64,000 nucleotides of DNA, from positions 124,001 to 188,000 of IMG/VR virus record IMGVR_UViG_3300032315_001715, one strand, 5' to 3'. Positions within the stretch are counted from its first letter, which is position 1. Each line of letters opens with the position of its first letter. The notes under the pieces are model-generated. The model ran no database searches. It saw only the letters and a program-made list of their open reading frames with translations, and had not been told where the DNA came from. A program made the translations under genes and the position numbers. Below, in pieces: positions 40,306 through 56,279 of this stretch.

Positions 40306-40752
40306 TTATTTTCTTTTGATCTGGGAACCCTTCTTGATGTAGATATCGTCTTCGGTTAATATTCGGAATACCAACCCATTCTTTTTACAATACATCATTG
40401 CTGCTGCCCATTTAGCGGTATTGACCAGCAATGCCGCTTTATCTCGCTTGCTTTTGGCATTTTCAGCAATGGCTTCTTTTTTCGGCTTAACTTCGACCAG
40501 CTCGGCTCGACGCTTACCAAATTTATCCTGATAAACGATCAAAAAATCCGGTATGTACATGCTTTTCCTACCGGTCAACGGATGAACATACGGTATTGAT
40601 ATGCTTTCACTGGCCCAGTTAATCACGTTTGGATGTTGATCTAGTAATGTCATGACCGTTAATTCCCACGAGCTTCGGTAGAACGGTCTTGCGTTGCCGA
40701 TCAGCTTTTGTGGATTTTTGGGTATGAATGCGTCTTGGCTATATTTGCTCAT
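40306..40752 (-). CDS. gp4: Head completion nuclease (T4 gp4-like)
   Basis: YRSSWE...WASE..IPY...YIPDF...VEVKP...N.AKW.AA...C. Confidence 0.88.
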   Translation of the reverse strand: MSKYSQDAFIPKNPQKLIGNARPFYRSSWELTVMTLLDQHPNVINWASESISIPYVHPLTGRKSMYIPDFLIVYQDKFGKRRAELVEVKPKKEAIAENAKSKRDKAALLVNTAKWAAAMMYCKKNGLVFRILTEDDIYIKKGSQIKRK

Positions 40753-42748: not shown

Positions 42749-43363
42749 TTAGCCATTAACAAAAAGAGGAACAGCCAATTCATTACCTTGAGTTGCGTTG
42801 TCGTAGCGAATTGTCAAAGTAATCATTGTCGGGTCAGAGCTAGAATAATCCATTTGATCATACTGTACCTGCTCAAGGAAGCAGCCCTCGAGGAACCATT
42901 CTTCAATAACGTTGGCAGGATATGCCATGGTACCATCGAGAGTTTGCATCAAGCATCCAAACTTGTAATTAACATGGGAACGAGCAGCACTCTGGCTAAA
43001 ATGATTCATCTGCTTTTGCAGTTGAGCGCTCACCAACCCAGAAACGCTATTGGTAATGTCGTCACGAAGGGCTATCTCAACGGTCTGCCATTCTGGCTTG
43101 TTAGCATAGTATGCAATGTTGTTGTAGCTGTGCAAGGCGGTATTGTTGTGCTGTAGCTGTGGTCGACCAGCTGTAGCAACCTGTTTGGTAAAATCGATCG
43201 GATTAATACCAGTTTGGCCAAAGCCCAACATCTGAACCCTGAACCGATGCTTTAGTTTTGGCATCAAGATCCCGCCTGTTAGGCCGGCCGAGTTACTAGG
43301 TACCCCGAATCGATTTAAGGTTCCGGTTTGCGTTATCGGATTTTGATTTGGAATGAGTGACAT
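42749..43363 (-). CDS. gp19: Tail tube protein (gp19-like)
   Basis: MPKLKHRFRV, YANKPEWQTV.I.LRDD, W.LEGCF...Y...DYSSSD...I.LTIRYD; TAAATA at 43394-43399. Confidence 0.85.
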   Translation of the reverse strand: MSLIPNQNPITQTGTLNRFGVPSNSAGLTGGILMPKLKHRFRVQMLGFGQTGINPIDFTKQVATAGRPQLQHNNTALHSYNNIAYYANKPEWQTVEIALRDDITNSVSGLVSAQLQKQMNHFSQSAARSHVNYKFGCLMQTLDGTMAYPANVIEEWFLEGCFLEQVQYDQMDYSSSDPTMITLTIRYDNATQGNELAVPLFVNG

Positions 43364-43417: not shown

Positions 43418-44017
43418 TCACCGGCTGCTTGACAGGTCTGGATCGCAAGTGAGGGCAACAGGGTTCCCATTAGACTTCATCAATCGATCCCAGGTGGTTG
43501 CATGGCACAGATCGAGGATTATGTGTGTTCGTATTTCATTGCCGTTGTTCACCGCGCTGTGCTGCGTTCGATTATTGATCTCGTAGATATGCCCGGGTTC
43601 TAGATGCTGGGAAAAATCCCTCCATAGTTGCAGGCATTTTTCATTGGTTTTTACCGGAACATGTATCCTATGGCAGTGCTCGTGGAACCATGCTGGATCT
43701 CGATGCCATCCCAGCTGAACCCCTGGCATCAATGTAGCAACTTCCCCTCGTAAAAACACATGGTTGTCAAACATGGATATCACTTGATCGCATACCGGTT
43801 TGCACAATTCAAGCAGGGTTCGTTGATCATCGGTAAGGTGATAATCTCTCGACTTGATCGGAAACGGAAACACCACCAACTTTCCGTCCTTTAATGGCGG
43901 TTCGTGTCTAGCATATTCCTCTTGTATCCAGTTCATCATGTTGCATTGATGAGCAATCGGTTCTATAATTGATATGTCAATCGTTGTTAGGTGCTTAACA
44001 AAGCCATCAAAATCCAT
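43418..44017 (-). CDS. AspH/LpxO-like 2OG-Fe(II) hydroxylase
   Basis: LMPG..LGWHRD...RIHVPV.TN...EINN...HSAVN.G...RTHIILD. Confidence 0.8.
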   Translation of the reverse strand: MDFDGFVKHLTTIDISIIEPIAHQCNMMNWIQEEYARHEPPLKDGKLVVFPFPIKSRDYHLTDDQRTLLELCKPVCDQVISMFDNHVFLRGEVATLMPGVQLGWHRDPAWFHEHCHRIHVPVKTNEKCLQLWRDFSQHLEPGHIYEINNRTQHSAVNNGNEIRTHIILDLCHATTWDRLMKSNGNPVALTCDPDLSSSR

Positions 44018-44654
44018 GGAAATCTCCGATCAAAACTTCTCAAGTATATATGAATGCGAACAGATAGCAAGTGATAACATCACACAATCAACATGGAATG
44101 ATTTGGTACGATTTGTAGAATTACAAACGTCTAAGTCTCCCAACCATGTTGCATTGTCGAACATGACCAACGAAGCACCGGCAGGTTTGCTGCATAATAT
44201 CGCGTCGAAAGCACGATGGACCAGCGACGTCGGAGAAATCGCACTGTTGCGGGCAAATGGTCAAATCATTGGGATCAGCTGCGTTGAATTCAGCGAGCTG
44301 CATTGCCAGCTTTCAGTCGGCGGAGCTAGATGTTGGCTGGATGATCAACATCGATCAAAACAGCTGATGAGCAGATATCTGTTAGACGCTAATCTGCGAT
44401 GGAGCCAAAATCGCCAATTATCAGGCATGCTGCTGACCTTTAACCATTACAATAAATGGATATATAATGGCATCAATCGAGCTGCTAATGGAAAAGCCGT
44501 TGGCATTGGATCGGTTTGGAGCAATTGGTGGGACGATTGCAAACCATTACCAAATCCAATAACCGTAAGATACACCAAACAATGGTGTGTGATCAAACCG
44601 CTAGCTAACCACGGACTAGACAACATCATCCAGGAGATTTTGAATTCCCAATGA
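44016..44654 (+). CDS. Putative GNAT-fold acyltransferase (alternative start 43974)
   Basis: LL..NGQIIGIS...RCWL...HRSKQL resembles GNAT motif A. Confidence 0.45.
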   Translation: MEISDQNFSSIYECEQIASDNITQSTWNDLVRFVELQTSKSPNHVALSNMTNEAPAGLLHNIASKARWTSDVGEIALLRANGQIIGISCVEFSELHCQLSVGGARCWLDDQHRSKQLMSRYLLDANLRWSQNRQLSGMLLTFNHYNKWIYNGINRAANGKAVGIGSVWSNWWDDCKPLPNPITVRYTKQWCVIKPLANHGLDNIIQEILNSQ

Positions 44655-45595
44655 CTGATCTGTATTCAAAATTTGAACTATCAAAAAATAACCATATTCG
44701 ATATTGGTTTAATAACGATTGTAATCAAATATATAGGAATCTCGCCAATGAAAGCTCGCACATGAGCCTCGGCGGCGCCATTAGCAAGACAACCGTTTCA
44801 TTTCTAGACTCATTAATGAATTCTGCCCGAGAAATTGGTGGAAAACATCATGGTGAGTTCCATCTGTTTCTCAGTGGCGGTCTTGACAGCGAGTTAGCAT
44901 TTCGATCATTCATTAGAGCCGGTGTTAGATTTCGTCCAGTGATTGTAAAATTTTCAAATAATCTCAACATCGAGGATGTTGTTGGTGCGATTACATTGTG
45001 TGCAACAGCTAACAAGGATCCTATCATTGTTGATTTTGATCCACTTGAGTTTTTTCTATCTGAAGATTGGAAGCGGATTGCTGTTAGCTACCAAGCACAC
45101 ACGTTTTATCAACAACTATTGATAAAGATCGCTGAGAATCTAGCCGCACCAATGATAACCATCGATGAGATTGAGATCAGCCGGGGTGACAGGGGTATTT
45201 GGAAATTCGTAAAGAAGGAGGACCAAGACGGTTGTTGGCATCGATTCGTCGAAAAAACCGGAATTCCGGCATACAATAATTTCTACACATACGATCCTCG
45301 TACCATCATCGCATTCATGTCTAGCCGTCGAATCAAATCTCTAATCAACAACGATGTTCACGGAAAGCTATCTTGGAACAGCAGCAAAAATGAGGTATAT
45401 TTCGAGTTGACAAGATTAAATATGGCCAAAAGACACAAGCGCCATGGCATGGAAAGAATGATGCATATCTGGGAATACGTTGAGAACGCAACATGTTTAT
45501 TAATGCCCGGCAGCCCGAGGACGTTTGAATATTCGGCCATACCTCTCCAAGCCAATCTACGAACCATGGAAGAGATGACATGCAATACCATATAA
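44651..45595 (+). CDS. PP-loop ATP pyrophosphatase, asparagine-synthetase-like, without glutaminase domain
   Basis: HLFLSGGLDSE. Confidence 0.7.
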   Translation: MTDLYSKFELSKNNHIRYWFNNDCNQIYRNLANESSHMSLGGAISKTTVSFLDSLMNSAREIGGKHHGEFHLFLSGGLDSELAFRSFIRAGVRFRPVIVKFSNNLNIEDVVGAITLCATANKDPIIVDFDPLEFFLSEDWKRIAVSYQAHTFYQQLLIKIAENLAAPMITIDEIEISRGDRGIWKFVKKEDQDGCWHRFVEKTGIPAYNNFYTYDPRTIIAFMSSRRIKSLINNDVHGKLSWNSSKNEVYFELTRLNMAKRHKRHGMERMMHIWEYVENATCLLMPGSPRTFEYSAIPLQANLRTMEEMTCNTI

Positions 45596-46152
45596 GATGG
45601 ATCACCCACAACGATGCCAATAATGTTATGGCATTGTCTAAACACATATATGAAACCGACAAGGAATCATATCCCACCAATCTCAACGTATCCAACCCAA
45701 ACATTCTATCTGCATTTTTCGTATCAGAAGACATCACCGGATCATATAATCGCCGCGCTATTGGAATCTTCGACAACAACCAACGCCTTGTTGCTGCTAC
45801 CGGTACCAGGAAGATGGATTTCATACCGGTCTGGGTCCTAAGCTGGACACTGAGCAGCATTAAAACCGCACAGTTTGGATCCATCTGGCAAAAACAGCTT
45901 GGAATGCTTACGGACGATTTTGAAAGTCGAGGTATTAACGAATTTTACGTGGTAAGCCCTGCTAGCAGGGAGCTTGCTTACAAGAAAATGATGAGATTCA
46001 TGAGAAAACGCTACTGGACCTTCGCCGAGCTTAACATCAGTGCTGGTACCAAGCCTTCCCACGGATTGCATTGGATTATCATGGGAAATCAACTGTATTC
46101 GTATGATATAAACATTCGACGATATATCTTAAAAAGGGGGGACAATGATTAA
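45580..46152 (+). CDS. Putative GNAT-like protein
   Basis: AIGIFD..QRLVAATG beta-hairpin and alpha/beta pattern; weak call. Confidence 0.35.
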   Translation: MQYHIRWITHNDANNVMALSKHIYETDKESYPTNLNVSNPNILSAFFVSEDITGSYNRRAIGIFDNNQRLVAATGTRKMDFIPVWVLSWTLSSIKTAQFGSIWQKQLGMLTDDFESRGINEFYVVSPASRELAYKKMMRFMRKRYWTFAELNISAGTKPSHGLHWIIMGNQLYSYDINIRRYILKRGDND

Positions 46153-47011
46153 CTGGATCAAATACACATGGCAAACATATAAGGTTACCGGGCAGATCCC
46201 ATACATTATTTCAATTTGGTTGCCTTTTCATCTTCTTTTAGTAGCTGGTATTGTTTTAGCCATCACAGCGTGGTCGTGGACTTATCTGGTGTATTTTGTA
46301 ATCGGATGGACCATTTTTGGTGGTCTCGGCACGGCAGTGATGCTGCATCGCCACGTGTCCCATCGTTCGATCGTCGTTAGAACCTGGATGAAACCAGGCT
46401 TATATTGGATCGGATGCTTGGCTGCACAGGGATCACCAATTTGGTGGGCCGCGTTGCATCGAGGCTACCATCACGCACATTCTGATAAAGACAAGGACAT
46501 ACACAGCCCAATCAATGGGTTCTGGCATGCATACATGGGCTGGATGTTTGGAATCAAACACGATTCAGTTAACCTCAAATACGGAGTCGAGCTGCTGAGA
46601 GATAAGCAGTTAATATGGTTCCATAAGAACTACAACATGGTGGTATGGGGATCAATTGTCGTGATGGCACTGATAGACCCTATGTTTTGTCTGTGGTTTT
46701 ATATCATACCAGCTATGGTTGGTTTACATACTGATAGCCTTGTAAACAGCGTGTGTCACACCATGGGTGCCGGATATCGACCGTTCGACACCAAGGATCG
46801 TAGCCAAAATGTTTGGTATCTCGGATATCTAGGCTGGGGCCAAGGTTGGCACAATAATCATCATTCTGATCCAAGAAGCTATGACTTTGGTACCACCGTT
46901 AGCAAAAAATGGTGGGAATTTGATCCGTGCATGTTATGGGTTCCAATCATATCGCCCTGGGCAGAAACTAAGAAAATTTGGGCACAATGGAGGAATTCAT
47001 GCGCTGGATAG
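46145..47011 (+). CDS. Membrane fatty-acid (delta-9-type) desaturase
   Basis: His boxes HRHVSH, HRGYHH, HNNHH; transmembrane segments; HSD.DKD.HSP. Confidence 0.9.
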   Translation: MINWIKYTWQTYKVTGQIPYIISIWLPFHLLLVAGIVLAITAWSWTYLVYFVIGWTIFGGLGTAVMLHRHVSHRSIVVRTWMKPGLYWIGCLAAQGSPIWWAALHRGYHHAHSDKDKDIHSPINGFWHAYMGWMFGIKHDSVNLKYGVELLRDKQLIWFHKNYNMVVWGSIVVMALIDPMFCLWFYIIPAMVGLHTDSLVNSVCHTMGAGYRPFDTKDRSQNVWYLGYLGWGQGWHNNHHSDPRSYDFGTTVSKKWWEFDPCMLWVPIISPWAETKKIWAQWRNSCAG

Positions 47012-47628
47012 CAATAGGAGCTACCGTTGAAAACGTTGTAATTGCTGCACACGACGAAATAACACTGCTAGAAACCATAGCCGAGCATGATTTCGACGTC
47101 ATCGTAAAGATATATGGATTGTCTGATGGTGAGTATAACGAAATCAAATCAGGCAACTATGAGTATCGAATTCGATTCAATAATCTAAGAAGCGTTTATC
47201 TTGAACGCATTGGTCGCAGCGAGGAAACCAAACAGCTATCTAGAATTTATACCAAACGAATACAACAAATGGTTGCAATGCGGGGTCGATACGAACATGC
47301 GTTCAACAAACACCGAGCGTTGCTGAGCCAGCAGTATGAAATTTATGAATCCAAGGCCATGGAAGCCAAGGACATCATCAACAACCAGAATAGCGCATTT
47401 TTTCTCGATGGGTATGTTAAGGATTATGCCGAGGAAGCCAACATGGATGTGTTGGCAGCAGCAACACTGATCTGGGCCAAATACACCAACTGGCACGAAT
47501 ATCTTCGAAAGATCGAGCGACTTCGCCTGCGGCATTTCAATGCACTCAAGACCGCCAAGACTGATGAGGATTTCCTTGCGCTTGCTGCCCAGGTCGACAA
47601 AGACTTCTTTATTAACATGCTGATGTAA
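46999..47628 (+). CDS. Hypothetical protein with a tail-fibre-assembly-like helical C-terminus
   Basis: QQYEIY..K..EA...A.....A..I..K...W.....IE..R pattern; SD GGAGG sets the start at 46999. Confidence 0.4.
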   Translation: MRWIAIGATVENVVIAAHDEITLLETIAEHDFDVIVKIYGLSDGEYNEIKSGNYEYRIRFNNLRSVYLERIGRSEETKQLSRIYTKRIQQMVAMRGRYEHAFNKHRALLSQQYEIYESKAMEAKDIINNQNSAFFLDGYVKDYAEEANMDVLAAATLIWAKYTNWHEYLRKIERLRLRHFNALKTAKTDEDFLALAAQVDKDFFINMLM

Positions 47629-47638
47629 AGGAACGGCC

Positions 47639-48718
47639 ATGGAATTAGTTTATTACACCCCTAACAAGCTGTATTCTTATCAAGATATTCGAAGGATTGA
47701 TCCGATGCAGGTGTCGTTTTCACAGATGTTTAATCCAAGCATCAGCTTGATGGATCGAACAGGATCAATTAATTGTCCACCTGTGTCGGTTAAGATCCTA
47801 GATAGTTTCCCGGAATGGACATCGCCGCCAAGCTTCGAGGAACTATGTTACTCGAGGTATGATTCGATATTGCAGCAAGCATTATCCTCCAACAAGACCG
47901 TGGTGATCTTCTATTCCGGTGGGATCGACAGCACGCTGATAGCGGCATTAGCAATCGCACATCCGGATTTCCATCGCCATCGAAATAATCTGCTGTTGGC
48001 GTTTAGCGAGGAAAGCATCAAAGAAAATCCAAAATTTTGGTATGACCGATTGTTGCCAGCGTTTGGGCATCGGATCATAAATTCAAACGGATATCATACG
48101 CATATATCTGACCCAAACAATGTATGCATCACCGGTGAATTTGCTGACAACATTTTTGGTAGCCTAACGGTTAAAAGCTACATGGATGTTAGTGGCGACT
48201 TTGATGCTATACAAAAGCCTTTTGCAGATACTGGAAGATTTTGGCTCTTAAAGAAAATCACCAGTCCTGCTGATCGAGATCGATGTGGTGATATGATGGA
48301 CAAGATCTTCGCAACCAGTCCCAGACCAATGGTGTCAAATCATGATTGCCTGTGGTGGTTGAATTTTGTGCTAAAGTGGCAAGCTGTTAAATTCAGGCTA
48401 GCTAGCCATGCACCTACACCCGATATGGTTGATCTCATGGCTAAAAATGTGGTCCATTTTTTTGAAACCAAGGAGTTTCAAAACTGGGCGGTGATGACCG
48501 ATGAACCAAAGGTTGAAAAGGATTGGTACAGCTATAAGCTGCCAGCAAAGAAGCTAATACATTCAATCAATGGCGACGATTATTATCTACGCTGGAAGAC
48601 CAAGTATCCTAGCATACCCGGATTGACCAGGTATGCTAATACACACGATTTCATATATTGGGACGAACCCAATGATCGATATGTTGCATCAAAGGATTAT
48701 CTATTACCTCTGAAGTGA
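47639..48718 (+). CDS. Second PP-loop asparagine-synthetase-like protein, without glutaminase domain
   Basis: VIFYSGGIDST and ITGEFADNIFG (AsnB-like SGEGADELFG). Confidence 0.75.
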   Translation: MELVYYTPNKLYSYQDIRRIDPMQVSFSQMFNPSISLMDRTGSINCPPVSVKILDSFPEWTSPPSFEELCYSRYDSILQQALSSNKTVVIFYSGGIDSTLIAALAIAHPDFHRHRNNLLLAFSEESIKENPKFWYDRLLPAFGHRIINSNGYHTHISDPNNVCITGEFADNIFGSLTVKSYMDVSGDFDAIQKPFADTGRFWLLKKITSPADRDRCGDMMDKIFATSPRPMVSNHDCLWWLNFVLKWQAVKFRLASHAPTPDMVDLMAKNVVHFFETKEFQNWAVMTDEPKVEKDWYSYKLPAKKLIHSINGDDYYLRWKTKYPSIPGLTRYANTHDFIYWDEPNDRYVASKDYLLPLK

Positions 48719-49446
48719 TCGTAAAGGCCGGTTCGATTTAAAAAGTCATCTGAGAACACGCCGTCGATCCTTAGGCTCCAATTGGCAAACTGGCAGGGTT
48801 CTGAACCGTGCCAGTTTGCGTTATCAAAATATATCACCCGAGAATCGGTATAGTGTTTGGTACCGTCGTTATCTAACACGAAGAATCGCTTGAGGGAGTT
48901 CAAGGTTAACCATATGAATTCGTTTCGATGGCTTCGAGGATTGGGATAATCCCGATGTGTTACGGTTTTAACGCCCGGTTCGTTGATGAACATCACCACA
49001 CGACCGTATTCGTTAAATACATTTTGGGAATCAATCCATTCAAATAGAAATTTGAAATCATTGGTAACGGGGGTATCAATGCAACTATCGTGCAGATGTT
49101 TCGTGCTGTAATGGTCCTGTTTCATCACACGGATATACATCGCTTGGTTCAAGCTAACCACCGGATGCATGTATTTGCAATAGGTGTAAAATCTACCAAG
49201 GCTTCCCAGCTTCGTGGCAATCTGTCTTGCATCTGAGGTTGGATCCCCTACCAAACCTTTTGCAAAGTCACCAAGCTCAATTTGTGTTTGATCATATAGA
49301 TTTGCTTGCACACCAACCAAACTGGTATAAATTTGTTCAGGATATTTGGCAATGGCATATGCAAACGCAGATTGGTGCTGTTCAAGCGCAGAAATATCTA
49401 TGTGGGTTGATAGATCAACCCACGGTTGATCGTTGACAAGATGCAT
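48697..49446 (-). CDS. Putative 2OG-Fe(II) oxygenase
   Basis: THRD ... NWHG ... SLRIDG; start moved to MHLV by SD GGAGAG. Confidence 0.6.
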   Translation of the reverse strand: MHLVNDQPWVDLSTHIDISALEQHQSAFAYAIAKYPEQIYTSLVGVQANLYDQTQIELGDFAKGLVGDPTSDARQIATKLGSLGRFYTYCKYMHPVVSLNQAMYIRVMKQDHYSTKHLHDSCIDTPVTNDFKFLFEWIDSQNVFNEYGRVVMFINEPGVKTVTHRDYPNPRSHRNEFIWLTLNSLKRFFVLDNDGTKHYTDSRVIYFDNANWHGSEPCQFANWSLRIDGVFSDDFLNRTGLYDHFRGNR

Positions 49447-49529
49447 GTTACTCTCCGAAATTGATGTTGACTTTTGGCATGTCTGCCTACATCGTTTATA
49501 ATTAAATACATACAGATAAGTCAAACCAG

Positions 49530-50555
49530 ATGTCATTAATCATTGATCCACGTAGTTATCATCAACAAGAAGACCACACACAATGGCCTTCTAGATTCCC
49601 AGCATGGTTGACTACAACGCAGGATTTATCCCCCGGAAGCTATGTGGTTCCTGATCACGATCACTCGATAGTCATGTTGGGAGGAGAACAACCTCGATGC
49701 ATGGCCAACGTCTGTACTCACAAACGATCCGTCATTCTCAAGGGAAGGGGACAGATCGGATCGGTGATGACCTGCCCGATACATAAATGGACATGGAGCT
49801 TAACCGGAAAGCTACGCGGCGCTAGGGGTTTTGAAAAAAGCTGCGAAATGGATCTCGAGGAACACCCGATACACACATGGCAAAGCCATATTTTTGGCGG
49901 AAATCAAAGCTGGCAAGAGGACATTGGATCTCTTGGCGATCTTGCCAAATGGTTGGATATACAGGACTATCAGTGGCATAGCGGATCAAGATTAAGCTAC
50001 GCATTTGATTGGAAGATTTTCATGGAAATCTTCCTAGATCTCTACCATGTTGCACCGTATCATCCTGGACTTCGAAGCTTAACCGATTGCAACACATTTG
50101 ATTGGATATTTGGCAAGCATTGGAGCTGTCAAACCGCTAAGTTTAACAGGGATTGGCCAAATGAGCTTGGTTATAGGGAGTTGTATAAGCTTTATCAGAA
50201 ATCAGGTCACTACGATTCGGCGATATATGGTGCGGTATGGTTGGGAATCTATCCAAACATCATGATCGAATACTATCCGGGATCAATCGTTGTTAGTACG
50301 GTATGGCCTGACGGACAAGGTAAGTGCGTTAACCATCTTGATTTTTATTATGAAACGTGGTTGTTGGAAAAATTTCCAGAGTTTCCTGCGGTATTCCAAA
50401 ATACGTTCATGACAACCGCCGACGAGGATGAAGAAATCGGGCTTAGGATGCAAGAAGGGTTATCATTGACCAAGACCCCATTTAAATCAATGAACCACAA
50501 GATTGAGGAAGCTGGGTATCAGCATTTCCATCAATGGTTACAAACGTATCTTTAG
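49530..50555 (+). CDS. Rieske non-heme iron oxygenase alpha subunit (choline monooxygenase/CntA-like)
   Basis: NVCTHK...CPIHKW Rieske ligands; WKIFMEIFLDLYHV..YH mononuclear iron motif; TAAATA at 49503-49508. Confidence 0.88.
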   Translation: MSLIIDPRSYHQQEDHTQWPSRFPAWLTTTQDLSPGSYVVPDHDHSIVMLGGEQPRCMANVCTHKRSVILKGRGQIGSVMTCPIHKWTWSLTGKLRGARGFEKSCEMDLEEHPIHTWQSHIFGGNQSWQEDIGSLGDLAKWLDIQDYQWHSGSRLSYAFDWKIFMEIFLDLYHVAPYHPGLRSLTDCNTFDWIFGKHWSCQTAKFNRDWPNELGYRELYKLYQKSGHYDSAIYGAVWLGIYPNIMIEYYPGSIVVSTVWPDGQGKCVNHLDFYYETWLLEKFPEFPAVFQNTFMTTADEDEEIGLRMQEGLSLTKTPFKSMNHKIEEAGYQHFHQWLQTYL

Positions 50556-51097
50556 ATAGAGCAAGCTACCAAATGTATTCGAGGTGTCCATCCGCCGTTG
50601 AAAACAAAGTGCTCTTTGGCGGTATGGACCCTGTACCAGTGACCATCAGATGGTAAATGATAACATATTGATCTTATTGAACTTTTTTCAAAGCATTCGC
50701 CAAATATTGCATTAAGGTTAGTGTCGATCGCTAGGTGATATCTATATCCGTCGTCCTTATGCATCGTTAGTCCGGTCTTGGGCATTAGTCGCATGAATCT
50801 AACCCTGCCCCATTTTACCCCAAGTGTCGATGAGAGATTTTTCAGTACACCCCTGGTATAATCAGGACATTGATCGTTCCATTGATCAAAATCAGATTCA
50901 ACGGCTAAGGTCTTTTTGGCAACGGTATCATATATCCACCCAGTGCAGTCTTTCCATTGGTCTGATGCATTAATTCGATGCCTAAGCCCAATTTGATTAT
51001 TTGATTCCCACGATGTCATTGACAACATCCGTTGAAGATCAGAACGAATCTGATCAAGATCAACGGTACCTTCTATTTTTTTGATAAAATCACTCAT
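50552..51097 (-). CDS. AspH-like 2OG-Fe(II) hydroxylase
   Basis: RFMRLMP...MHKD...YHLAIDTN...HFVFNGG..PRIHLV. Confidence 0.75.
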   Translation of the reverse strand: MSDFIKKIEGTVDLDQIRSDLQRMLSMTSWESNNQIGLRHRINASDQWKDCTGWIYDTVAKKTLAVESDFDQWNDQCPDYTRGVLKNLSSTLGVKWGRVRFMRLMPKTGLTMHKDDGYRYHLAIDTNLNAIFGECFEKSSIRSICYHLPSDGHWYRVHTAKEHFVFNGGWTPRIHLVACSI

Positions 51098-51677
51098 GAT
51101 TCTTTCTACCTATGATCATGTATCTAGAAAAATTCCACGTCGGATAATTGAAATCAAGCTGGCCTTTATACATCATCGGGGATAGACCATAGTTTGAGAC
51201 AAATGATTCTAGATCATCATAGCAATCATGATGATCGTCATGCGGCATGTTATTGCTTTGCAATACCATCATGGTACCAGACGGTATGCGATCATACCAA
51301 TCCCTGGAATGAAAATGTTCGGTGCTGGTATTAATCACGATATCCGGTGGTGGTCCATATTCTCCGCTGATTGGATCTATGGAATTACAGTCTCGGGTAA
51401 ATGCCTTGAATTTCCAACCTTGCCATATCCAATTTTCCATCAGGCTATCAGCTGTTGATTCACAGCTCGGATCAACATCAAAGCTCCTGATGTGTGATAT
51501 TGGCATGATCTGCCTTGCTAGCAACAGCATTCCGGTCATAGCGTGCCATCCACCGTATAACCAAATTATCTGCGGGCGATCGTACTGCATCCGTTCCAAT
51601 TGAGAACAAAGCCATAACTTGCTTGATATCTGGCCGCTGCTAAAAGCATCCCTACTGACAAGAAACTGATCAGCCAT
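51090..51677 (-). CDS. Class I SAM-dependent methyltransferase-like protein
   Basis: LYGGWHA, IRSFDVDP, DIVINTSTEH. Confidence 0.6.
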   Translation of the reverse strand: MADQFLVSRDAFSSGQISSKLWLCSQLERMQYDRPQIIWLYGGWHAMTGMLLLARQIMPISHIRSFDVDPSCESTADSLMENWIWQGWKFKAFTRDCNSIDPISGEYGPPPDIVINTSTEHFHSRDWYDRIPSGTMMVLQSNNMPHDDHHDCYDDLESFVSNYGLSPMMYKGQLDFNYPTWNFSRYMIIGRKNHE

Positions 51678-51966
51678 GACCGACCTGGCCGTACGTATTA
51701 TAGCTCACTTTTTCAATTGTCGACGAGAAGCTCTTTTCGAATATTGTCTGGGCTACCCGGAGATACTCGTTGCGATATTTTTCGGGTATCTGTCCAATGA
51801 TCAGCCCTAAATTTGTAGCAACCGCAGATACAACAACACCAATGGACTGATCCGGTGGGATCGTTTCGATCATCTGCTGATATAACTCTGATATGTATTC
51901 ATACATATCCTCATTTATCGCGAGTTGGATATCCGTAATGTCACTATGATCGTCGTTAGTTGCCAT
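51670..51966 (-). CDS. Small hypothetical protein
   Basis: 98 aa, overlapping the next gene. Confidence 0.5.
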   Translation of the reverse strand: MATNDDHSDITDIQLAINEDMYEYISELYQQMIETIPPDQSIGVVVSAVATNLGLIIGQIPEKYRNEYLRVAQTIFEKSFSSTIEKVSYNTYGQVGHG

Positions 51967-51969
51967 TGT

Positions 51970-52173
51970 CTATTGCTTCTTCTTTTTGTAACGAGTTAGC
52001 AAGGCTGATATAGTTTCAGCATTTCCTTGCTCTTCAGGGTGATTCTGTAATAACCATTCTTCAACTTCCATGCAGGTACGTTGATTTGTTGCTACCAGTC
52101 GAAGCATTTGGATCGCTTCTTCAAGTCGTAATTCTAAGATTTGTATTTTGCTTTCAGGAGACTTCTTAACCAT
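51970..52173 (-). CDS. Small hypothetical protein
   Basis: 67 aa, tight packing. Confidence 0.5.
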   Translation of the reverse strand: MVKKSPESKIQILELRLEEAIQMLRLVATNQRTCMEVEEWLLQNHPEEQGNAETISALLTRYKKKKQ

Positions 52174-52211: not shown

Positions 52212-52239
52212 TAAAAAAAGGGTCCTTTCGGACCCTTTT
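52212..52239 (-). terminator. Rho-independent terminator after the sheath gene
   Basis: aaaagggtcc-gaaa-ggaccctttt followed by further T's on the minus strand. Confidence 0.85.
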
Positions 52240-52244
52240 CTTTG

Positions 52245-55200
52245 TTACGCAGAACCTCCTGGTAGAGGATCGCCAGTATTGAGTATCCTGATCGGGATAT
52301 AGATGAACTCAATCGCCTTTTCTGGCTTGATCGCAATATCAATCCACAGCTCGTTCCTGTCAATTCTTTCAGCGGTGTTGTTGCTGTCGTCGCAAACCAC
52401 GGCAAAGTCGTACACTGCCCGCAGAGTTTGCAGGTTGCGCATGAAGGAATTAAACGTAGCAACGACGTTCTGGCGCGTTTGCTGATCGTTAGGCTCAAAG
52501 AGGAACGGTTTTGCAAGTATATCTAGGTTGTATTTGAGATAGTTAATCAGCCGTACAACGTTGATTCGATCCAGTGCCGTGGGCACCGGGCTTAGGGTCT
52601 TCTGACCATATACCACAAGTCCTCGACCTGGAATGAACGCGATCGGATTGATCTTGTTGGCGTAGAGAACATCGCGCTGGCCTTGATTCAACCGGACCAC
52701 GCTGTATTCTTCCTCGGCATTGAGATATCCAACGCTTGCTACACCGGTAACCAATCCTCGGTTGAATCCTGCCGGAGCAAACCACGGATATGCAACCTGA
52801 TCGCTGTATGCTATGGTACGAAGGGCCATCATCGCCGCCGGTACCATTACTTCATTACCGTTGAGATCCGTTCCAAGACCCCAAGGATAGTAAAGGGCTG
52901 CATACGGAGTGCTGCTGGTTAGTCCATCTGGACCATTGCTTGCTGCACCGTTCTGATTGTTAGCCCATTCCGTGAACGCGGTGCCAGTTGGTTCTAGCGT
53001 TGCAGGTGTGTCAGCTACGATAAACGCAACTTCCTTCTTGTCAACATTTAGGGTGATCATTTCATCCAAGCATTCAACATATCCGGGGGTTGAAATGAGG
53101 TTGAAATAGGTTTCTTCGGCACGTGCTTCCTCGTTACCACTAATCGCACCCTGCAACCCGCGCACGATGACAGCCCTCTGTGCTGCATCGCCCATGTACG
53201 GTGCACCGTTGAGCTGATTGCCACTTTCGGTAACCCAACGGTCACGATAAGAATATGTCGTCGGTAGGTAGTTCTTTCGGAACACCTTGACGTTGTTGGT
53301 GCTGTAACGGGTATTAAACAACATCATACCGGCTGGATACAACATTGCATCTGGGCAATCTGGATCAACATAATCGCTGGTAACCATATCACTTTCAATT
53401 TGGCTGCCAGTTGCGGTGCCGTTAGCATTTGGACGTGCATCGGCAAACACGATCCCCTTGCTGGTGGTTCGATCGGTGTTATCGACCAACACCCAGCTTG
53501 CATCCATGCTGCTGTATCGATAGATTGCCGGATATGTCGATACGTTGGTATCAATCCAGATATCGTAATCAACCAATGCACCAAGAGTGCTTTGCTCAAG
53601 AGGAGCCTCGCTTGACAATATCGGTCCGTTTGGATCAGTTGCTGGATATGCATTCCTATAGCCAAGCCACTGTGTTCCGTTATTGACCATGATATCGGCA
53701 CGCAACGTTGTATTGTACCAAAGTGTGCCATCAACCGGAGTACCGCTCGGAGCAGACGCTGATGGAGTATAATCTAGGTCAACCCACGAAGTTCCATCCC
53801 ATTCCTTGATGACATGCGATGCTTCGGCCGGAGATGTGTTGTCGCTGTTATACAGCACAAACACGCTGCCGATTTGCTTGAGACTACCAAATGCAACATC
53901 AGCTGCCGACGTCGACGAATACATGGGAACCGTACCGGTGTTCGGCCTAATGTTTAGGGACCGCCATGCAGCTCCGGTATAGGTCTTAACCGAGTAGTTT
54001 GCACCTTGGTTTCCCGGCGTGGTGTTGATCCACACATTGGTAGCAGCGATGCTGGATAGATCAGACGGTACAGTTAACCCTGGTGAATAACCCTGGTAAA
54101 CCAGCGAACGACCAAAGGTTACACCTGCAGCAATTCCGGCTCCTGCCAATGGGCTTTCCCTGATATCCTCAAGGATAAAACTGGTGCCATTGGTGTTGGT
54201 AAGTTTCAGCATGTTGTCGGTGGTCTTGCTTGCTACGATCGGACCGTTAGGGAATCCAACCGTATTGATTTCTGCAATCAATCCATCCAAGGTATTGTTA
54301 GGAAGGGCCGGAACGTGGATTATCACCGGGCCGCTGCCTGCGTCAATGCTGAAACTCACGCTCTGCAACCAGTCATCTATAAGATTAAACGTTGCGCCGA
54401 CTCCACCACCGGTGACCGACACCGGATTAGTTGGGTATATCGTATAGCTACCAGGAGTGGTAACAGTTACAGTGTTTACACCCCATACCAAGTCAACCGT
54501 TGCACTATCTCCGCCGCCGGAGGTCGAAGTTGCTGATACGTTTGTGGTAGGAGCAACAGCACCGGTATATTGACCAGCCTGGACAATGCTCAGCCCGGTA
54601 ATACCGTTCGATCCATCAATGCTGTCAACCTTCAATATCACCGGTGTTGCAAATCCAGCTCCGCTAAAGGTCAGCGTGTCATTAACATCGTATCCGCTAC
54701 CTGGGACGTTTGGAGTGCCTCCGACGACCTTAATGCTAGCGACTGTCAATACCGTTGCCGTGCTAAAGGTACCTCCAGCAACCGTCAACGCATCACTAAC
54801 CGCGTATCCGCTGCCAGCTGCTACCGAGGTAGCGCTTGCGGTCTTCAGCGTTGCTGCGGTAAACGTTGGATTGCTAACGGTGCCGGTTACGCTGGCCCAA
54901 TAGGTGTTGGTAGGAAGTATTCCTGCATTCCTCCACGGTGTTCCGACGCCATACTGATCACTGAGATCATTAACGATGATGTCGGTCGAATCATAGTTGG
55001 TTATGCGTAGATATTTTTGGCTACCAACGGTGTACACAGATGCCACGGCATTAACACTGGCCGTGTTAAGTGCAGTGTTGATTGCACCGACAAATCCAGT
55101 CAGCGTGCCACCAGATGGTACCGTAATCGTTGCTGTGCTCACTGCACCGATCGTGATCTTGCACTGAGTGCCGGCGGTAAATGTTGGATTTGCAACGGTT

Positions 55201-56279
55201 CCAGTTAACACACGCGGAGCAGCTTCTCGCCATCCGTATCCAGGATATGTATCATCGGTGCTGCCAACCTTGAACCACCAATTAGCCGTACCAGTGTTGG
55301 TGTTGACAGATATCTTTTCCCAGATCTCATTCTTGTAGCTACCGTCAGCCGCTTCGAGGGTATTCACGGCAAAATCACCAGAGGCGCCAAAGATCGTGGT
55401 AGGTAACACAACGTTGTCAGGCAGTGCTGTAAATCCTAAATCGGTTAGGATTCCGGCGGTTGAGCCGCCAAGAACAATGTCCTGTATCATGTTCGAGGTA
55501 ACCAGCCTTAGGCTAAACACGTCCCCGTAATCAGACGCCGATGGCGAATACTTTTCAGATCGAACAAAGACCTGTGCGCGAACCTGCTGTGTAGCAAGTG
55601 CTGGACTTCCGTTGATCTTGCTAGCCACGGTCGAAATGCTCATCCCTGCGGTTAGTGGCAAGGAAACACCGTTAACAATGAGATTTCCGTTGGCATTAAT
55701 GCAGCTACCAGATCCGCTGGTAATCTTCACAGTTGCATTACCTTGCACGATCTTTTCGAGATTTAAGCTAGAATTAATAACCAATGGCGTGCGGGCCTGC
55801 CAGCTAAATGCCGGGTTTGGATTACCATTGCTACGGAAGATGCCAAACGTGGACGAGCTTAGGTCAAGCCAATTTTGTCCGGCAGTTACAGGACCGGTCG
55901 GTTCGGTCGAAGTTGGGATCAACTGTCCAAGATCAACATTGGCGCGGACCACATATGCTTGATTGGCAATTCCGAGGTACTCATACAAGGTGAAAAGTCC
56001 AAGCTCGTTAAGCTGATTGCCCTGCTGCACGGTGCCAGCTGAGCTGTAAAACTGCGGATTGCCAAACGTCTGCAACGCATCTCGCTGGCTGGTAATCAAC
56101 CATAGCTTGCCGGCATTTTCTGCGGTGGTTCCAGGAGCAACGGACGTCGCACTACCTGGTTGCAGCTTGTTCTGCTTGGTAGCGATTACGATAAATGGTA
56201 CGGTGCCCGGTCCAGCTGGGCCATATTGGCTTTCGTCGGTTACGGTAACGCTTACACCTGGAGAAACTAAAATAGCCAT
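52245..56279 (-). CDS. gp18: Tail sheath protein (gp18-like) with large insertions
   Basis: LVSPGVSVTVTDES start; WFAPAGFNRG, LYANKINPI, GQKTL, DRINVVRL, FLFEPND, CDDSNNT, PEKAIEFIYIPI; TAAATA at 56312-56317. Confidence 0.93.
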   Translation of the reverse strand: MAILVSPGVSVTVTDESQYGPAGPGTVPFIVIATKQNKLQPGSATSVAPGTTAENAGKLWLITSQRDALQTFGNPQFYSSAGTVQQGNQLNELGLFTLYEYLGIANQAYVVRANVDLGQLIPTSTEPTGPVTAGQNWLDLSSSTFGIFRSNGNPNPAFSWQARTPLVINSSLNLEKIVQGNATVKITSGSGSCINANGNLIVNGVSLPLTAGMSISTVASKINGSPALATQQVRAQVFVRSEKYSPSASDYGDVFSLRLVTSNMIQDIVLGGSTAGILTDLGFTALPDNVVLPTTIFGASGDFAVNTLEAADGSYKNEIWEKISVNTNTGTANWWFKVGSTDDTYPGYGWREAAPRVLTGTVANPTFTAGTQCKITIGAVSTATITVPSGGTLTGFVGAINTALNTASVNAVASVYTVGSQKYLRITNYDSTDIIVNDLSDQYGVGTPWRNAGILPTNTYWASVTGTVSNPTFTAATLKTASATSVAAGSGYAVSDALTVAGGTFSTATVLTVASIKVVGGTPNVPGSGYDVNDTLTFSGAGFATPVILKVDSIDGSNGITGLSIVQAGQYTGAVAPTTNVSATSTSGGGDSATVDLVWGVNTVTVTTPGSYTIYPTNPVSVTGGGVGATFNLIDDWLQSVSFSIDAGSGPVIIHVPALPNNTLDGLIAEINTVGFPNGPIVASKTTDNMLKLTNTNGTSFILEDIRESPLAGAGIAAGVTFGRSLVYQGYSPGLTVPSDLSSIAATNVWINTTPGNQGANYSVKTYTGAAWRSLNIRPNTGTVPMYSSTSAADVAFGSLKQIGSVFVLYNSDNTSPAEASHVIKEWDGTSWVDLDYTPSASAPSGTPVDGTLWYNTTLRADIMVNNGTQWLGYRNAYPATDPNGPILSSEAPLEQSTLGALVDYDIWIDTNVSTYPAIYRYSSMDASWVLVDNTDRTTSKGIVFADARPNANGTATGSQIESDMVTSDYVDPDCPDAMLYPAGMMLFNTRYSTNNVKVFRKNYLPTTYSYRDRWVTESGNQLNGAPYMGDAAQRAVIVRGLQGAISGNEEARAEETYFNLISTPGYVECLDEMITLNVDKKEVAFIVADTPATLEPTGTAFTEWANNQNGAASNGPDGLTSSTPYAALYYPWGLGTDLNGNEVMVPAAMMALRTIAYSDQVAYPWFAPAGFNRGLVTGVASVGYLNAEEEYSVVRLNQGQRDVLYANKINPIAFIPGRGLVVYGQKTLSPVPTALDRINVVRLINYLKYNLDILAKPFLFEPNDQQTRQNVVATFNSFMRNLQTLRAVYDFAVVCDDSNNTAERIDRNELWIDIAIKPEKAIEFIYIPIRILNTGDPLPGGSA

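What the first reader, a model, noticed from the sequence alone, without database searches (positions are those of the whole stretch)
43418..52173. Candidate undescribed phage biosynthetic/tailoring island between tail tube and tail sheath
Seen: 12 tightly overlapping genes in four alternating transcription units separate gp19 from gp18. They comprise 3 HxD..H oxygenases, 2 GNAT-like proteins, 2 PP-loop ligases, a His-box desaturase, a Rieske oxygenase, a methyltransferase-like protein and small ORFs. Known: gp18 and gp19 are adjacent in T4. Acylation (GNAT), ATP-dependent amide formation, desaturation, hydroxylation and methylation are the chemistry of secondary-metabolite and amino-lipid pathways; for example, OlsB is a GNAT and OlsC/LpxO are AspH-family hydroxylases. 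Inference: this is one pathway that makes a desaturated, hydroxylated N-acyl amide or amino-lipid, or that decorates virion proteins or the host envelope. I know of no characterised phage pathway with this enzyme set.
Basis: partly seen in the sequence, partly recalled or inferred. Interest (0 to 1): 0.85.

Follow-up and report, generated by a model that had tools for sequence, protein, structure and literature searches.

The report
Conserved enzyme module in huge phages
A freshwater huge phage carries, between its tail-sheath and tail-tube genes, a tightly packed set of oxygenases, a membrane fatty-acid desaturase, two ATP-dependent amide-forming enzymes and acyltransferase-like proteins; the set recurs in hundreds of uncultured phages, so it probably works as one pathway, most likely on a lipid-like molecule, though its product is unknown.

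Summary
The genes are real. There are 13 intact ORFs in five strand blocks at 43418-52173, almost all overlapping, between the tail tube (42749-43363) and a 1344-aa sheath (52245-56279). Shown: two AspH-family cupins (g01, g10), a third HxD..H protein (g08), an SCD1-type membrane desaturase (g05), a CntA/GbcA-like Rieske oxygenase (g09) and two SGGxDS PP-loop proteins (g03, g07). g07 models as a glutaminase-less AsnB-type synthetase. The GNAT (g02, g04) and methyltransferase (g11) calls rest on weak evidence only.

IMG/VR holds 263 g07 relatives. At least 26 of 30 full-flank loci keep most of g02-g07, an AspH and g11 together in at least four gene orders. Extras include FA hydroxylase, TauD, radical SAM, an ACP and a thioesterase.

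The sheath-tube position is incidental. That gap is a hot spot (58 bp to 8.9 kb), and the module usually sits beside ThyX. g12-g13 belong to the backbone.

Best reading, inferred: a lipid or N-acyl-amide tailoring pathway. The product is unknown. No cultured phage has g03, or a g07 relative above 26% identity. g06, the constant partner of g07, has no solved-structure match.

The parts
42749..43363 (-). Tail tube protein (flank, not part of the module)
   Evidence: tblastn 51% identity to the PA5oct/Cassandra tail tube proteins
43418..44017 (-). g01: AspH-family (cupin) Fe(II)/2OG oxygenase, H105-R-D107 motif; found only in the closest relatives
   Evidence: Pfam PF05118 32.4 bits against cutoff 22.6; motif; absent from L078; hit in 10 of 79 module loci
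44016..44654 (+). g02: GNAT-fold-like protein (the ORF opens at 43974; likely start at 44016)
   Evidence: Atlas score 0.96 to clusters partly carrying PF00583, and the Atlas record starts at residue 15; weak hhalign to a bona fide GNAT at the same position in L085; no Pfam hit
44651..45595 (+). g03: stand-alone PP-loop ATPase of the Asn-synthase/QueC type (SGGLDS at residue 75)
   Evidence: Motif; Atlas 0.99 to viral ~300-aa 'Asn synthase domain' clusters; 86 homologues, all unannotated
45580..46152 (+). g04: possible GNAT-like protein, always between g03 and g05
   Evidence: Atlas 0.97, nearest cluster 20% PF00583; hhalign to a GNAT negative; synteny
46145..47011 (+). g05: membrane di-iron desaturase of the stearoyl-CoA (delta-9) type; the only membrane protein of the island
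   Evidence: Pfam FA_desaturase E 2e-14; SCD1 4ymk E 1e-15; His boxes HRHVSH, HRGYHH, HNNHH and two hydrophobic hairpins
46999..47628 (+). g06: protein of unknown fold, constant neighbour of g07
   Evidence: AF2 pLDDT 92; no PDB match, best E 0.7; only uncharacterised viral matches; adjacent to g07 in phages, CPR bacteria and a Polynucleobacter prophage
47639..48718 (+). g07: glutaminase-less AsnB-type adenylating amide synthetase (SGGIDS at residue 93)
   Evidence: AF2 pLDDT 94.6; best Foldseek hits TsnB9, ASNS, AsnB, CarA and beta-lactam synthetase; 118 homologues
48697..49446 (-). g08: putative Fe(II)/2OG oxygenase of an undescribed family (HRD..H..R); the ORF extends to 49536 but the likely start is M31
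   Evidence: Invariant H194, D196, H243 and R256 in the alignment of four orthologues, numbered from the long ORF; no Pfam or PDB hit
49474..49502 (+). Best sigma-70-like promoter match, in the only real intergenic gap of the island, upstream of g09
   Evidence: TTGGCA-17-TATAAT, 11 of 12; consensus match only. The region as a whole has fewer such sites than shuffles
49530..50555 (+). g09: Rieske non-haem iron oxygenase alpha subunit, closest to CntA, GbcA and Stc2
   Evidence: Pfam Rieske and Ring_hydroxyl_A; PDB 6y9c E 1.6e-11; NCBIfam GbcA; motifs; present in only 5 of 79 module loci
50552..51097 (-). g10: AspH-family Fe(II)/2OG oxygenase (H113-K-D115)
   Evidence: Pfam PF05118 35.5 bits against cutoff 22.6; present in 48 of 79 module loci
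51090..51677 (-). g11: conserved protein with Rossmann/SAM-methyltransferase-like motifs (unproven). It occurs without the enzymes next to the sheath in relatives, and with the module elsewhere
   Evidence: Alignment; weak hhalign to a Methyltransf_24 protein; 51 of 79 module loci; alone in L008 and L045
51670..51966 (-). g12: small backbone ORF (98 aa, one hydrophobic stretch); not part of the enzyme module
   Evidence: Present with the sheath in relatives that lack the enzymes; hydropathy
51970..52173 (-). g13: small backbone ORF (67 aa); not part of the enzyme module
   Evidence: Present with the sheath in relatives that lack the enzymes
52216..52239 (.). Perfect 10-bp-stem hairpin between the sheath stop and g13
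   Evidence: Terminator-like scan
52245..56279 (-). Tail sheath, 1344 aa (flank, not part of the module)
   Evidence: Pfam Phage_sheath_1C E 2e-17

Best explanation
The island is a lineage-specific copy of a conserved, mobile multi-enzyme module of freshwater huge phages. In this clade it landed in the sheath-tube hot spot. I think it most likely tailors a lipid-like substrate: an N-acyl amide or amino-lipid, or acyl chains of host envelope lipids.

Shown: g05 is an integral-membrane SCD-type di-iron desaturase. g03 and g07 carry the PP-loop motif. g07 (by model) and probably g03 (by language-model neighbours) are AsnB-type synthetase domains without a glutaminase domain. g01 and g10 are AspH-family oxygenases, g08 carries the same metal triad, and g09 is a Rieske oxygenase.

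Inferred roles. g02 and g04 (GNAT-like) make the N-acyl link. g05 puts a cis double bond in the acyl chain. g01, g10 and g08 hydroxylate the chain or head group, as LpxO, OlsC and OlsD do. g09 oxidises or demethylates an amine-type head group. g03, and g07 together with g06, activate a carboxylate as acyl-AMP and couple it to ammonia or an amine. g11 may methylate.

Electron donors for g05 and g09, and 2-oxoglutarate, would come from the host. A likely pay-off is altered envelope properties or a phosphorus-free lipid during infection, but this is speculation.
For: One unit. IMG/VR holds 263 g07 relatives. Within 10 kb in the best 79 loci, g05 is found in 61, g03 in 56, g06 in 51, g11 in 51, g04 in 48, an AspH in 48 and g02 in 47. 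At least 26 of 30 full-flank loci keep most of the set in at least four gene orders. The block is collinear at 35-85% identity in L075, L078, L079, L081, L084 and L085. Its core is as conserved as the sheath: dN is 0.08-0.10 with saturated dS.

Lipid theme. The desaturase is the most constant partner and is membrane-bound. FA_hydroxylase is present in 46 of 79 loci. L084 adds an ACP with a DSL site, a 4HBT thioesterase and TauD. A Bdellovibrio MAG cluster adds an acyl-AMP ligase, an SDR and a BKACE. AspH-type, FA_hydroxylase-type and methyltransferase enzymes are the families that modify ornithine lipids and lipid A (review PMC12971839).

Amide chemistry. The g07 model has pLDDT 94.6, and its best PDB matches are TsnB9, AsnB, CarA and beta-lactam synthetase.
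Against: No product, substrate or expression data exist, and no RNA run was listed. No gene matches a specific lipid enzyme such as OlsB, OlsC or LpxO beyond superfamily level. The GNAT and methyltransferase calls are weak. AsnB-type enzymes are not known in lipid pathways. The g06-g07 pair also occurs without any desaturase in CPR bacteria, in one locus near a YcaO/nitroreductase set, and in a lambda-like prophage with a radical SAM and a cupin. ThyX accompanies the module in four arrangements, which the lipid reading does not explain. The desaturase and AspH genes also occur without the PP-loop genes.
Confidence: 0.42

Rival explanations
1. Peptide or protein maturation. The module modifies a ribosomal peptide (RiPP-like) or a phage or host protein, possibly a tail protein. 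The AsnB-type enzymes would amidate or cyclise Asp/Glu or C-terminal carboxylates. The AspH-type, TauD and Rieske oxygenases would hydroxylate residues, and the GNAT and methyltransferase would decorate them.
For: Radical SAM/SPASM genes sit in some module versions. Radical SAM trios and B12-radical SAM genes occupy the same hot spot in relatives. In one CPR locus the g06-g07 pair lies near YcaO, nitroreductase and a 64-aa ORF. In a Polynucleobacter prophage it follows the tail-fibre genes, with a radical SAM and a cupin. From general knowledge, AsnB homologues act as lasso cyclases and as thiopeptide C-terminal amidotransferases.
Against: No precursor-like small ORF travels with the module. 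g12 and g13 are backbone genes. g06 has no invariant residue that could serve as an acceptor. The most constant partners are membrane di-iron lipid-type enzymes, which have no known role in peptide maturation. Most copies are not near structural genes.
Confidence: 0.2
2. A soluble small-molecule pathway, not a membrane lipid. The module makes or degrades an amino-acid-derived or quaternary-amine metabolite (signal, siderophore-like, beta-lactam-like or hydroxamate-like). The desaturase would act on a short acyl side chain.
For: The closest solved relatives of g07 are secondary-metabolite enzymes: TsnB9, carbapenam synthetase and beta-lactam synthetase. g09 is closest to the carnitine, glycine-betaine and stachydrine oxygenases. 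The Bdellovibrio cluster has BKACE, TRAP-type binding proteins, an acyl-AMP ligase and an SDR. The CPR loci have a sodium:solute symporter next to g07.
Against: g05 and FA_hydroxylase are integral-membrane enzymes of families that act on long acyl chains. The Rieske gene is present in only 5 of 79 loci. There is no core scaffold enzyme (NRPS, PKS, NIS) in any locus seen.
Confidence: 0.15
3. Nucleotide or nucleic-acid modification linked to ThyX. The PP-loop enzymes, acyltransferases, methyltransferase and oxygenases would build a hypermodified base.
For: A canonical ThyX (RHR-x7-S motif) lies inside or next to the module in four different arrangements and in 52 of 79 loci. PP-loop enzymes are common in base modification. 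Some neighbours of g03 carry weak QueC hits.
Against: The window's copy has no ThyX within 64 kb. No DNA transglycosylase, kinase or pyrophosphorylase of known hypermodification pathways was seen. g07 models as an AsnB-type enzyme, and TilS, QueC, MnmA and ThiI are absent from its 50 best PDB matches. A membrane desaturase has no place in such a pathway. ThyX may only mark an early nucleotide-metabolism region, since ribonucleotide reductase lies next to it in L086.
Confidence: 0.1
4. No common function. Unrelated auxiliary genes have piled up in a recombination hot spot.
For: The sheath-tube gap ranges from 58 bp to 8.9 kb and holds unrelated cargo: a homing endonuclease in PA5oct, a Ro-like protein in Phosso, and radical SAM or sugar-nucleotide genes in others. 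The island has lower GC than its flanks, about 43% against 48%. Desaturase and AspH genes occur alone elsewhere.
Against: The same 8-10 families stay together in at least 26 of 30 full-flank loci, in several orders and at a different genomic site. They overlap one another. dN is low for all.
Confidence: 0.08

Closest known systems
Ornithine-lipid and lipid A modifying enzymes (OlsC/OlsD/LpxO, OlsE, OlsG, with the OlsB N-acyltransferase)
   Same: Same enzyme superfamilies: AspH-type Fe(II)/2OG hydroxylases (g01, g10), di-iron FA_hydroxylase (in most module versions), a possible methyltransferase (g11) and GNAT-like acyltransferases (g02, g04). Families as described in PMC12971839.
   Different: No orthology is shown; the hits are at superfamily level only. 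The module also has two AsnB-type amide synthetases, an SCD-type desaturase, g06 and, in this clade, a Rieske oxygenase. None of these is part of the known amino-lipid pathways. No O-acyltransferase (OlsA) was seen.
Cyanophage and pelagiphage lipid desaturase and AspH auxiliary genes
   Same: Phage-borne stearoyl-CoA/DesC-type desaturases and AspH-like genes are described as auxiliary metabolic genes (PMC5776448, listed; PMC7029224; PMC7678222). Pelagibacter phage Mosig has both.
   Different: There they are single genes. In Mosig they lie about 32 kb apart. Here they are embedded in an overlapping operon-like module with PP-loop, GNAT-like and unknown proteins that cultured phages lack.
Asparagine synthetase B family synthetase domains (AsnB, TsnB9, carbapenam synthetase CarA, beta-lactam synthetase)
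   Same: g07 has the PP-loop SGGxDS motif and a confidently modelled fold whose best PDB matches are these enzymes, over about 320 aligned columns.
   Different: There is no N-terminal glutaminase domain. TM-scores are low (0.32-0.40) and identity is 10-14%. The Pfam Asn_synthase hit is below cutoff (20.7 against 21 bits). g07 always pairs with g06, which has no solved analogue.
Quaternary-amine Rieske oxygenases (CntA, GbcA, Stc2)
   Same: g09 has the Rieske and catalytic domains with complete metal motifs, and these are its best solved and NCBIfam matches.
   Different: E-values are modest (1e-11 to 1e-7) and scores are far below the equivalog cutoffs (32 against 670 bits). No reductase partner is in the island. 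The substrate is unknown.

Membership tests
Membrane fatty-acid desaturase, stearoyl-CoA (delta-9) type | Three His boxes (HX4H, HX2-3HH, HX2HH) that supply the di-iron ligands | tested here: met
   g05: HRHVSH at 68, HRGYHH at 105, HNNHH at 236
Membrane fatty-acid desaturase, stearoyl-CoA (delta-9) type | Sequence membership in PF00487 and similarity to SCD1 | tested here: met
   Pfam 54.2 bits against cutoff 29.7; 4ymk E 1.2e-15. The NCBIfam DesA equivalog score is far below its cutoff
Membrane fatty-acid desaturase, stearoyl-CoA (delta-9) type | Four transmembrane helices in two hairpins | tested here: met
   Hydrophobic stretches at residues 18-67 and 164-194; hydropathy only
Membrane fatty-acid desaturase, stearoyl-CoA (delta-9) type | Desaturation of an acyl-CoA or acyl-lipid at delta-9 | not testable with these tools
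   Needs an enzyme assay or lipidomics
Aspartyl/asparaginyl beta-hydroxylase family (PF05118; includes LpxO, OlsC, OlsD) | Pfam score above the gathering cutoff | tested here: met
   g01 32.4 bits and g10 35.5 bits against 22.6. g08 has no hit
Aspartyl/asparaginyl beta-hydroxylase family (PF05118; includes LpxO, OlsC, OlsD) | HxD/E...H iron triad | tested here: met
   g01 H105-R-D107, g10 H113-K-D115, g08 H164-R-D166. In g08 the distal His and an Arg are invariant in four orthologues
Aspartyl/asparaginyl beta-hydroxylase family (PF05118; includes LpxO, OlsC, OlsD) | Orthology to the lipid hydroxylases LpxO, OlsC or OlsD | not tested
   No reference sequences of these were at hand. The resemblance is at family level, from the literature
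Asparagine synthetase B-type synthetase (PP-loop ATP pyrophosphatase) | SGGxDS PP-loop motif | tested here: met
   g03 SGGLDS at 75, g07 SGGIDS at 93; invariant in 39 and 58 homologues
Asparagine synthetase B-type synthetase (PP-loop ATP pyrophosphatase) | Fold of the AsnB C-terminal synthetase domain | tested here: met
   g07 model (pLDDT 94.6): the best PDB matches are AsnB-family enzymes at probability 0.95-1.0, but TMq is only 0.32-0.40. For g03 there are only indirect Atlas neighbours
Asparagine synthetase B-type synthetase (PP-loop ATP pyrophosphatase) | N-terminal class II glutaminase domain | tested here: not met
   g03 (314 aa) and g07 (359 aa) have no such domain, and no GATase Pfam hit. 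They are therefore not asparagine synthetases proper
Asparagine synthetase B-type synthetase (PP-loop ATP pyrophosphatase) | Pfam Asn_synthase score above the cutoff | tested here: not met
   g07 20.7 bits against 21; g03 has no hit
Rieske non-haem iron oxygenase, alpha subunit | CxH...CxxH [2Fe-2S] motif and the (E/D)x3Dx2Hx4H catalytic iron motif | tested here: met
   g09: CTH at 62, CPIH at 82, EIFLDLYHVAPYH at 166; Pfam Rieske and Ring_hydroxyl_A above cutoffs
Rieske non-haem iron oxygenase, alpha subunit | A dedicated reductase or ferredoxin partner | tested here: not met
   None in the island. No ferredoxin or reductase family appeared among 46 other window ORFs. The host may supply one
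GNAT acyltransferases | Pfam or profile membership and the acyl-CoA binding motif A (Q/RxxGxG/A) | tested here: inconclusive
   No Pfam hit for g02 or g04. Atlas neighbours are partly GNAT. hhalign of g02 against a GNAT gives E 0.007 over the beta4-alpha3 region; g04 is negative. By eye, no glycine-rich motif A in the sequences
Class I SAM-dependent methyltransferases | Profile membership; glycine-rich motif I and an acidic residue after beta2 | tested here: inconclusive
   g11: invariant GGW and D67 in matching register. hhalign to a Methyltransf_24 protein gives E 0.08. No Pfam, PDB or PHROG hit
RiPP biosynthetic clusters | A precursor peptide gene that travels with the maturases | tested here: not met
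   No spare small ORF in the island. g12 and g13 stay with the sheath in relatives that lack the enzymes

The most novel reading that the evidence does not exclude
Huge phages of lakes carry a self-contained pathway, absent from cultured phages, that makes a previously unseen desaturated and hydroxylated N-acyl amide lipid in the infected cell. It uses a new class of two-component amide synthetase: a glutaminase-less AsnB-type enzyme (g07) plus a protein of novel fold (g06). This two-gene unit is shared with CPR bacteria, Bdellovibrionota and small temperate phages.
Probability: 0.25. Interest if true: 0.85.

Novelty: new variant of a known kind. Interest (0 to 1): 0.62.

Why it matters
Single lipid desaturase or hydroxylase genes in phages are known as auxiliary metabolic genes. 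My searches found no description of a conserved module of about ten enzymes. It is present in at least 263 viral contigs, is under selection as strong as that on the tail sheath, and is missing from cultured phages and from PHROGs for 12 of its 13 genes. If it makes or remodels a lipid, it would show that large phages rebuild the host envelope with their own multi-step chemistry. This would be relevant to phosphorus economy, superinfection exclusion and membrane properties in lakes. The g06-g07 pair would then define an uncharacterised amide-forming enzyme system that is also found in CPR and predatory bacteria.

Tried and rejected
Searches that gave nothing.
- Megablast of the island against GenBank phages found no match.
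- PHROGs had no family for 12 of the 13 genes.
- Sequence-profile searches of the PDB for g03, g07, g08, g11 and the u324b/u231 proteins gave only PP-loop-motif hits or nothing.
- Foldseek of g06 against the PDB gave no match.
- Literature searches for jumbo or huge phages with desaturases, AspH or biosynthetic clusters found only single-gene reports.
- No RNA sequencing run was listed, so transcription units could not be checked, and read laying was not used.
- No flanking direct or inverted repeats mark an insertion.

Ideas rejected.
- The sheath-tube position is functional. Rejected because only 5 of 79 module loci lie there.
- g03/g07, and g02/g04, are recent paralogues. Rejected because they show no detectable similarity beyond the PP-loop.
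- g12 or g13 is an acyl carrier protein or a precursor peptide. Rejected: they have no DSL motif and they stay with the backbone.
- 'Acinetobacter phage MD-2021a' is a phage relative with a desaturase and a Rieske gene. Rejected: those records are bacterial chromosome.

Left open. My guess that the u324b/u231 proteins of other module versions are GT-A glycosyltransferases (DxD-like motifs) found no support in Pfam, PHROGs or the PDB. It remains an untested lead.

Full report
**Where the window comes from**

The tail tube protein (42749-43363, minus strand) is 51% identical to the tubes of Pseudomonas phage PA5oct and its kin, and 43-48% identical to those of Agrobacterium phage Atu_ph07 and Sinorhizobium phage Phosso. 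Identical DNA lies on a 452,799-bp IMG/VR contig and on a 170-kb one. DNA runs that hold parts of the island are lake and freshwater metagenomes. The rest of the window is ordinary for a huge myovirus: terminase, gp15-like sheath stabiliser, DnaB, RecA, gp32, two CCA-adding-like enzymes and no tRNA.

**The observation**

Between the tube and a 1344-aa sheath (52245-56279; Pfam sheath domains) lie 13 ORFs. They sit in five strand blocks and almost all overlap by 2-22 nt. The only real intergenic space is 83 bp before g09. That space holds the best sigma-70-like match of the region, 11 of 12 positions at 49474-49502.

Two starts are probably shorter than the longest ORFs:
- g02 starts at 44016.
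- g08 starts at 49446, because orthologues begin there.
- g06 starts at 46999.

The island has lower GC than its flanks, about 0.42-0.45 against 0.47-0.51. Against the 77%-identical relative L075, synonymous sites are saturated while dN is 0.08-0.25 for the enzymes. These are therefore functional genes, and g05-g08 are as constrained as the sheath (dN 0.07).

**What each gene is**

| Gene | Call | Evidence |
|---|---|---|
| g01, g10 | AspH family (PF05118) | Scores above the gathering cutoff; HxD motifs |
| g08 | Likely Fe(II)/2OG oxygenase of an undescribed family | No database hit; invariant H-x-D...H...R across four orthologues down to 28% identity |
| g05 | SCD1-type membrane desaturase | Pfam; PDB 4ymk E 1e-15; three His boxes and two hydrophobic hairpins; the only membrane protein in the island |
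| g09 | Rieske oxygenase alpha subunit | Complete metal motifs; nearest solved and curated relatives are carnitine, glycine-betaine and stachydrine oxygenases at modest scores |
| g07 | AsnB-type synthetase domain without a glutaminase domain | 118 homologues gave an AlphaFold model at pLDDT 94.6; best PDB matches are TsnB9, human and E. coli AsnB, carbapenam synthetase and beta-lactam synthetase, with low TM-scores of 0.32-0.40 |
| g03 | PP-loop protein, probably also AsnB-like | Invariant SGGxDS; nearest Atlas clusters are viral ~300-aa 'Asn synthase domain' proteins |
| g06 | Unknown fold | Models confidently (pLDDT 92); no PDB counterpart; only uncharacterised viral look-alikes |
| g02, g04 | GNAT-like, weak | Language-model similarity; g02 has a weak profile match to a true GNAT at the same position in L085; g04 has none |
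| g11 | Methyltransferase-like, unproven | Rossmann/SAM-like motifs in the right register; no significant match; 357 homologues carry no Pfam domain |

**Is it one unit?**

The closest relatives keep the block:
- L075 has all 13 genes in order.
- L078 (50-64% identity) has g02-g07 and g09-g13.
- L077 has g07 and g09-g13 up to its contig end.

More distant huge phages carry the same families tightly linked at another genomic site. These are contigs of 86-332 kb with g07 at 29-54% identity.

A scan of IMG/VR with the g07 profile found 263 relatives. Counts within 10 kb in the best 79 loci, many of them truncated, are below.

| Gene or family | Loci of 79 |
|---|---|
| g05 desaturase | 61 |
| g03 | 56 |
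| ThyX | 52 |
| g06 | 51 |
| g11 | 51 |
| u324b, u231 (two paralogous unknown proteins) | 50, 49 |
| g04 | 48 |
| AspH (g10-like) | 48 |
| g02 | 47 |
| FA_hydroxylase | 46 |
| g08 | 25 |
| Rieske (g09) | 5 |
| Sheath and tube | 5 |

Of the 30 loci with full flanks, at least 26 keep most of the set, in at least four different gene orders. Extras in some versions are:
- TauD.
- An ACP with a DSL site and a 4HBT thioesterase.
- Radical SAM/SPASM.

**The position**

The sheath-tube gap in 71 related loci ranges from 58 bp to 8.9 kb. Its contents vary:
- PA5oct has a homing endonuclease there.
- Phosso has a Ro-like protein.
- The nearest relative without the enzymes has only g13, g12 and g11 (L008).
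- Others hold three radical SAM genes, or B12-radical SAM plus desaturase plus AspH, or AspH plus aminotransferase-like, UDP-glucose dehydrogenase, epimerase and desaturase genes.

The gap is therefore a hot spot, g12-g13 are backbone genes, and the module landed there only in the window's clade. g11 occurs without the enzymes next to the sheath, and with the module elsewhere.

**Beyond phages**

The g06-g07 pair occurs in several other settings:
- A complete Kaiserbacteria chromosome and other CPR genomes, in one Moranbacteria locus near a YcaO/nitroreductase set, and next to a solute symporter.
- Bdellovibrionales MAGs. One contig also has two desaturases, g08-, g02- and AspH-like genes, an acyl-AMP ligase, an SDR, a BKACE and a B12-radical SAM.
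- A lambda-like prophage of a cultured Polynucleobacter strain, after the tail-fibre genes, with a radical SAM and a cupin.

Cultured phages lack g03 altogether. Their only g07-like genes (Pseudomonas phage Cygsa01) are 24-26% identical. They have no Rieske gene of this type.

**Mechanism**

What is shown: one membrane di-iron desaturase, three or four iron oxygenases, two adenylating PP-loop enzymes and a constant unknown partner (g06) are inherited together.

What I infer: the substrate carries an acyl chain. Four lines of evidence point that way.
- The desaturase is the most constant partner.
- FA_hydroxylase is the usual second membrane enzyme.
- An ACP and a thioesterase join in one lineage.
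- AspH-type, FA_hydroxylase-type and methyltransferase enzymes are the families that modify ornithine lipids and lipid A (OlsC, OlsD, LpxO, OlsE, OlsG; PMC12971839).

In this reading the AsnB-type enzymes would convert a carboxylate to an amide through an acyl-AMP.

This reading leaves three things unexplained: the ThyX linkage, the desaturase-free g06-g07 pairs, and the radical SAM partners. These keep a peptide/protein-maturation reading, a soluble-metabolite reading and, less likely, a nucleotide-modification reading alive. The 'unlinked genes in a hot spot' reading is largely excluded by the synteny data.

**Comparison and novelty**

Single phage desaturase and AspH genes are already described (PMC5776448, PMC7029224, PMC7678222). 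My searches found no description of the multi-enzyme module, its AsnB-type pair or g06. PHROGs has no family for 12 of the 13 genes. I class it as a new variant of a known kind, namely phage auxiliary metabolic or biosynthetic gene sets. The product is undetermined, and two component calls (GNAT, methyltransferase) remain unproven.

Noticed in passing
window 40306-40752 (-): A TnsA-like endonuclease N-terminal domain protein (Pfam E 2e-22) sits inside the neck/tail gene block. It is conserved at about 80% identity in 67 related loci, which is unusually strong for a nuclease-like gene among structural genes.
   Followed up: partly
window 12045-12395 (-): A small ORF with a C...CGC tail looks like an A-type iron-sulphur cluster carrier. 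A Pfam Fe-S_biosyn hit occurs among the window ORFs. It could serve the phage's Fe-S or Rieske enzymes.
   Followed up: no
window 52245-56279 (-) and 52216-52239: The sheath is 1344 aa, but only its last ~230 residues match the sheath Pfam models, so most of it is uncharacterised insertion. A perfect 10-bp-stem hairpin follows its stop codon.
   Followed up: no
L047 2005-7218; L026 3239-9863: In related phages the same sheath-tube hot spot holds three radical SAM genes (L047), or B12-radical SAM plus two further radical SAM genes, a desaturase and two AspH-like genes (L026).
   Followed up: partly
L053 6082-9886 (518-kb phage contig): Next to the tail tube lie AspH, an aminotransferase-like gene, UDP-glucose dehydrogenase, an NAD-dependent epimerase/dehydratase and a desaturase. 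The sugar-nucleotide set is reminiscent of lipid A aminoarabinose enzymes. This is a lead only.
   Followed up: no
L186 7492-11825 (Polynucleobacter sp. JS-Safj-400b-B2 contig): A lambda-like prophage of a cultured freshwater bacterium carries radical SAM, a 116-aa ORF, g06-like, g07-like and cupin genes right after its tail-fibre genes. This is a tractable system for the g06-g07 pair.
   Followed up: partly
L185 4703-11801 (Moranbacteria MAG); L087 9303-13942 (Kaiserbacteria chromosome): In CPR bacteria the g06-g07 pair lies next to a sodium:solute symporter. In L185 it also lies near YcaO, nitroreductase and a 64-aa ORF. In L087 a further PP-loop gene lies nearby.
   Followed up: partly
L084 853-5173 and the matching genes in about 50 module loci: Two paralogous unknown proteins (324 and 231 aa, with FISYDEP...VDAD motifs) and two further unknown proteins travel with the module in most phages, but are absent from the window. 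There is no Pfam, PHROG or PDB match.
   Followed up: partly
L106 and hits H22-H30 ('Acinetobacter phage MD-2021a' records): These records in the phage collection carry trpBC, btuB, baeSR and antA. They look like bacterial chromosome, so their desaturase and Rieske hits are not phage genes.
   Followed up: yes
L105 7007-9156 (Pseudomonas phage Cygsa01): Two PP-loop genes annotated as MnmA lie beside the baseplate genes. They are distant g07 relatives (24-26% identity), so the MnmA annotation is doubtful.
   Followed up: no
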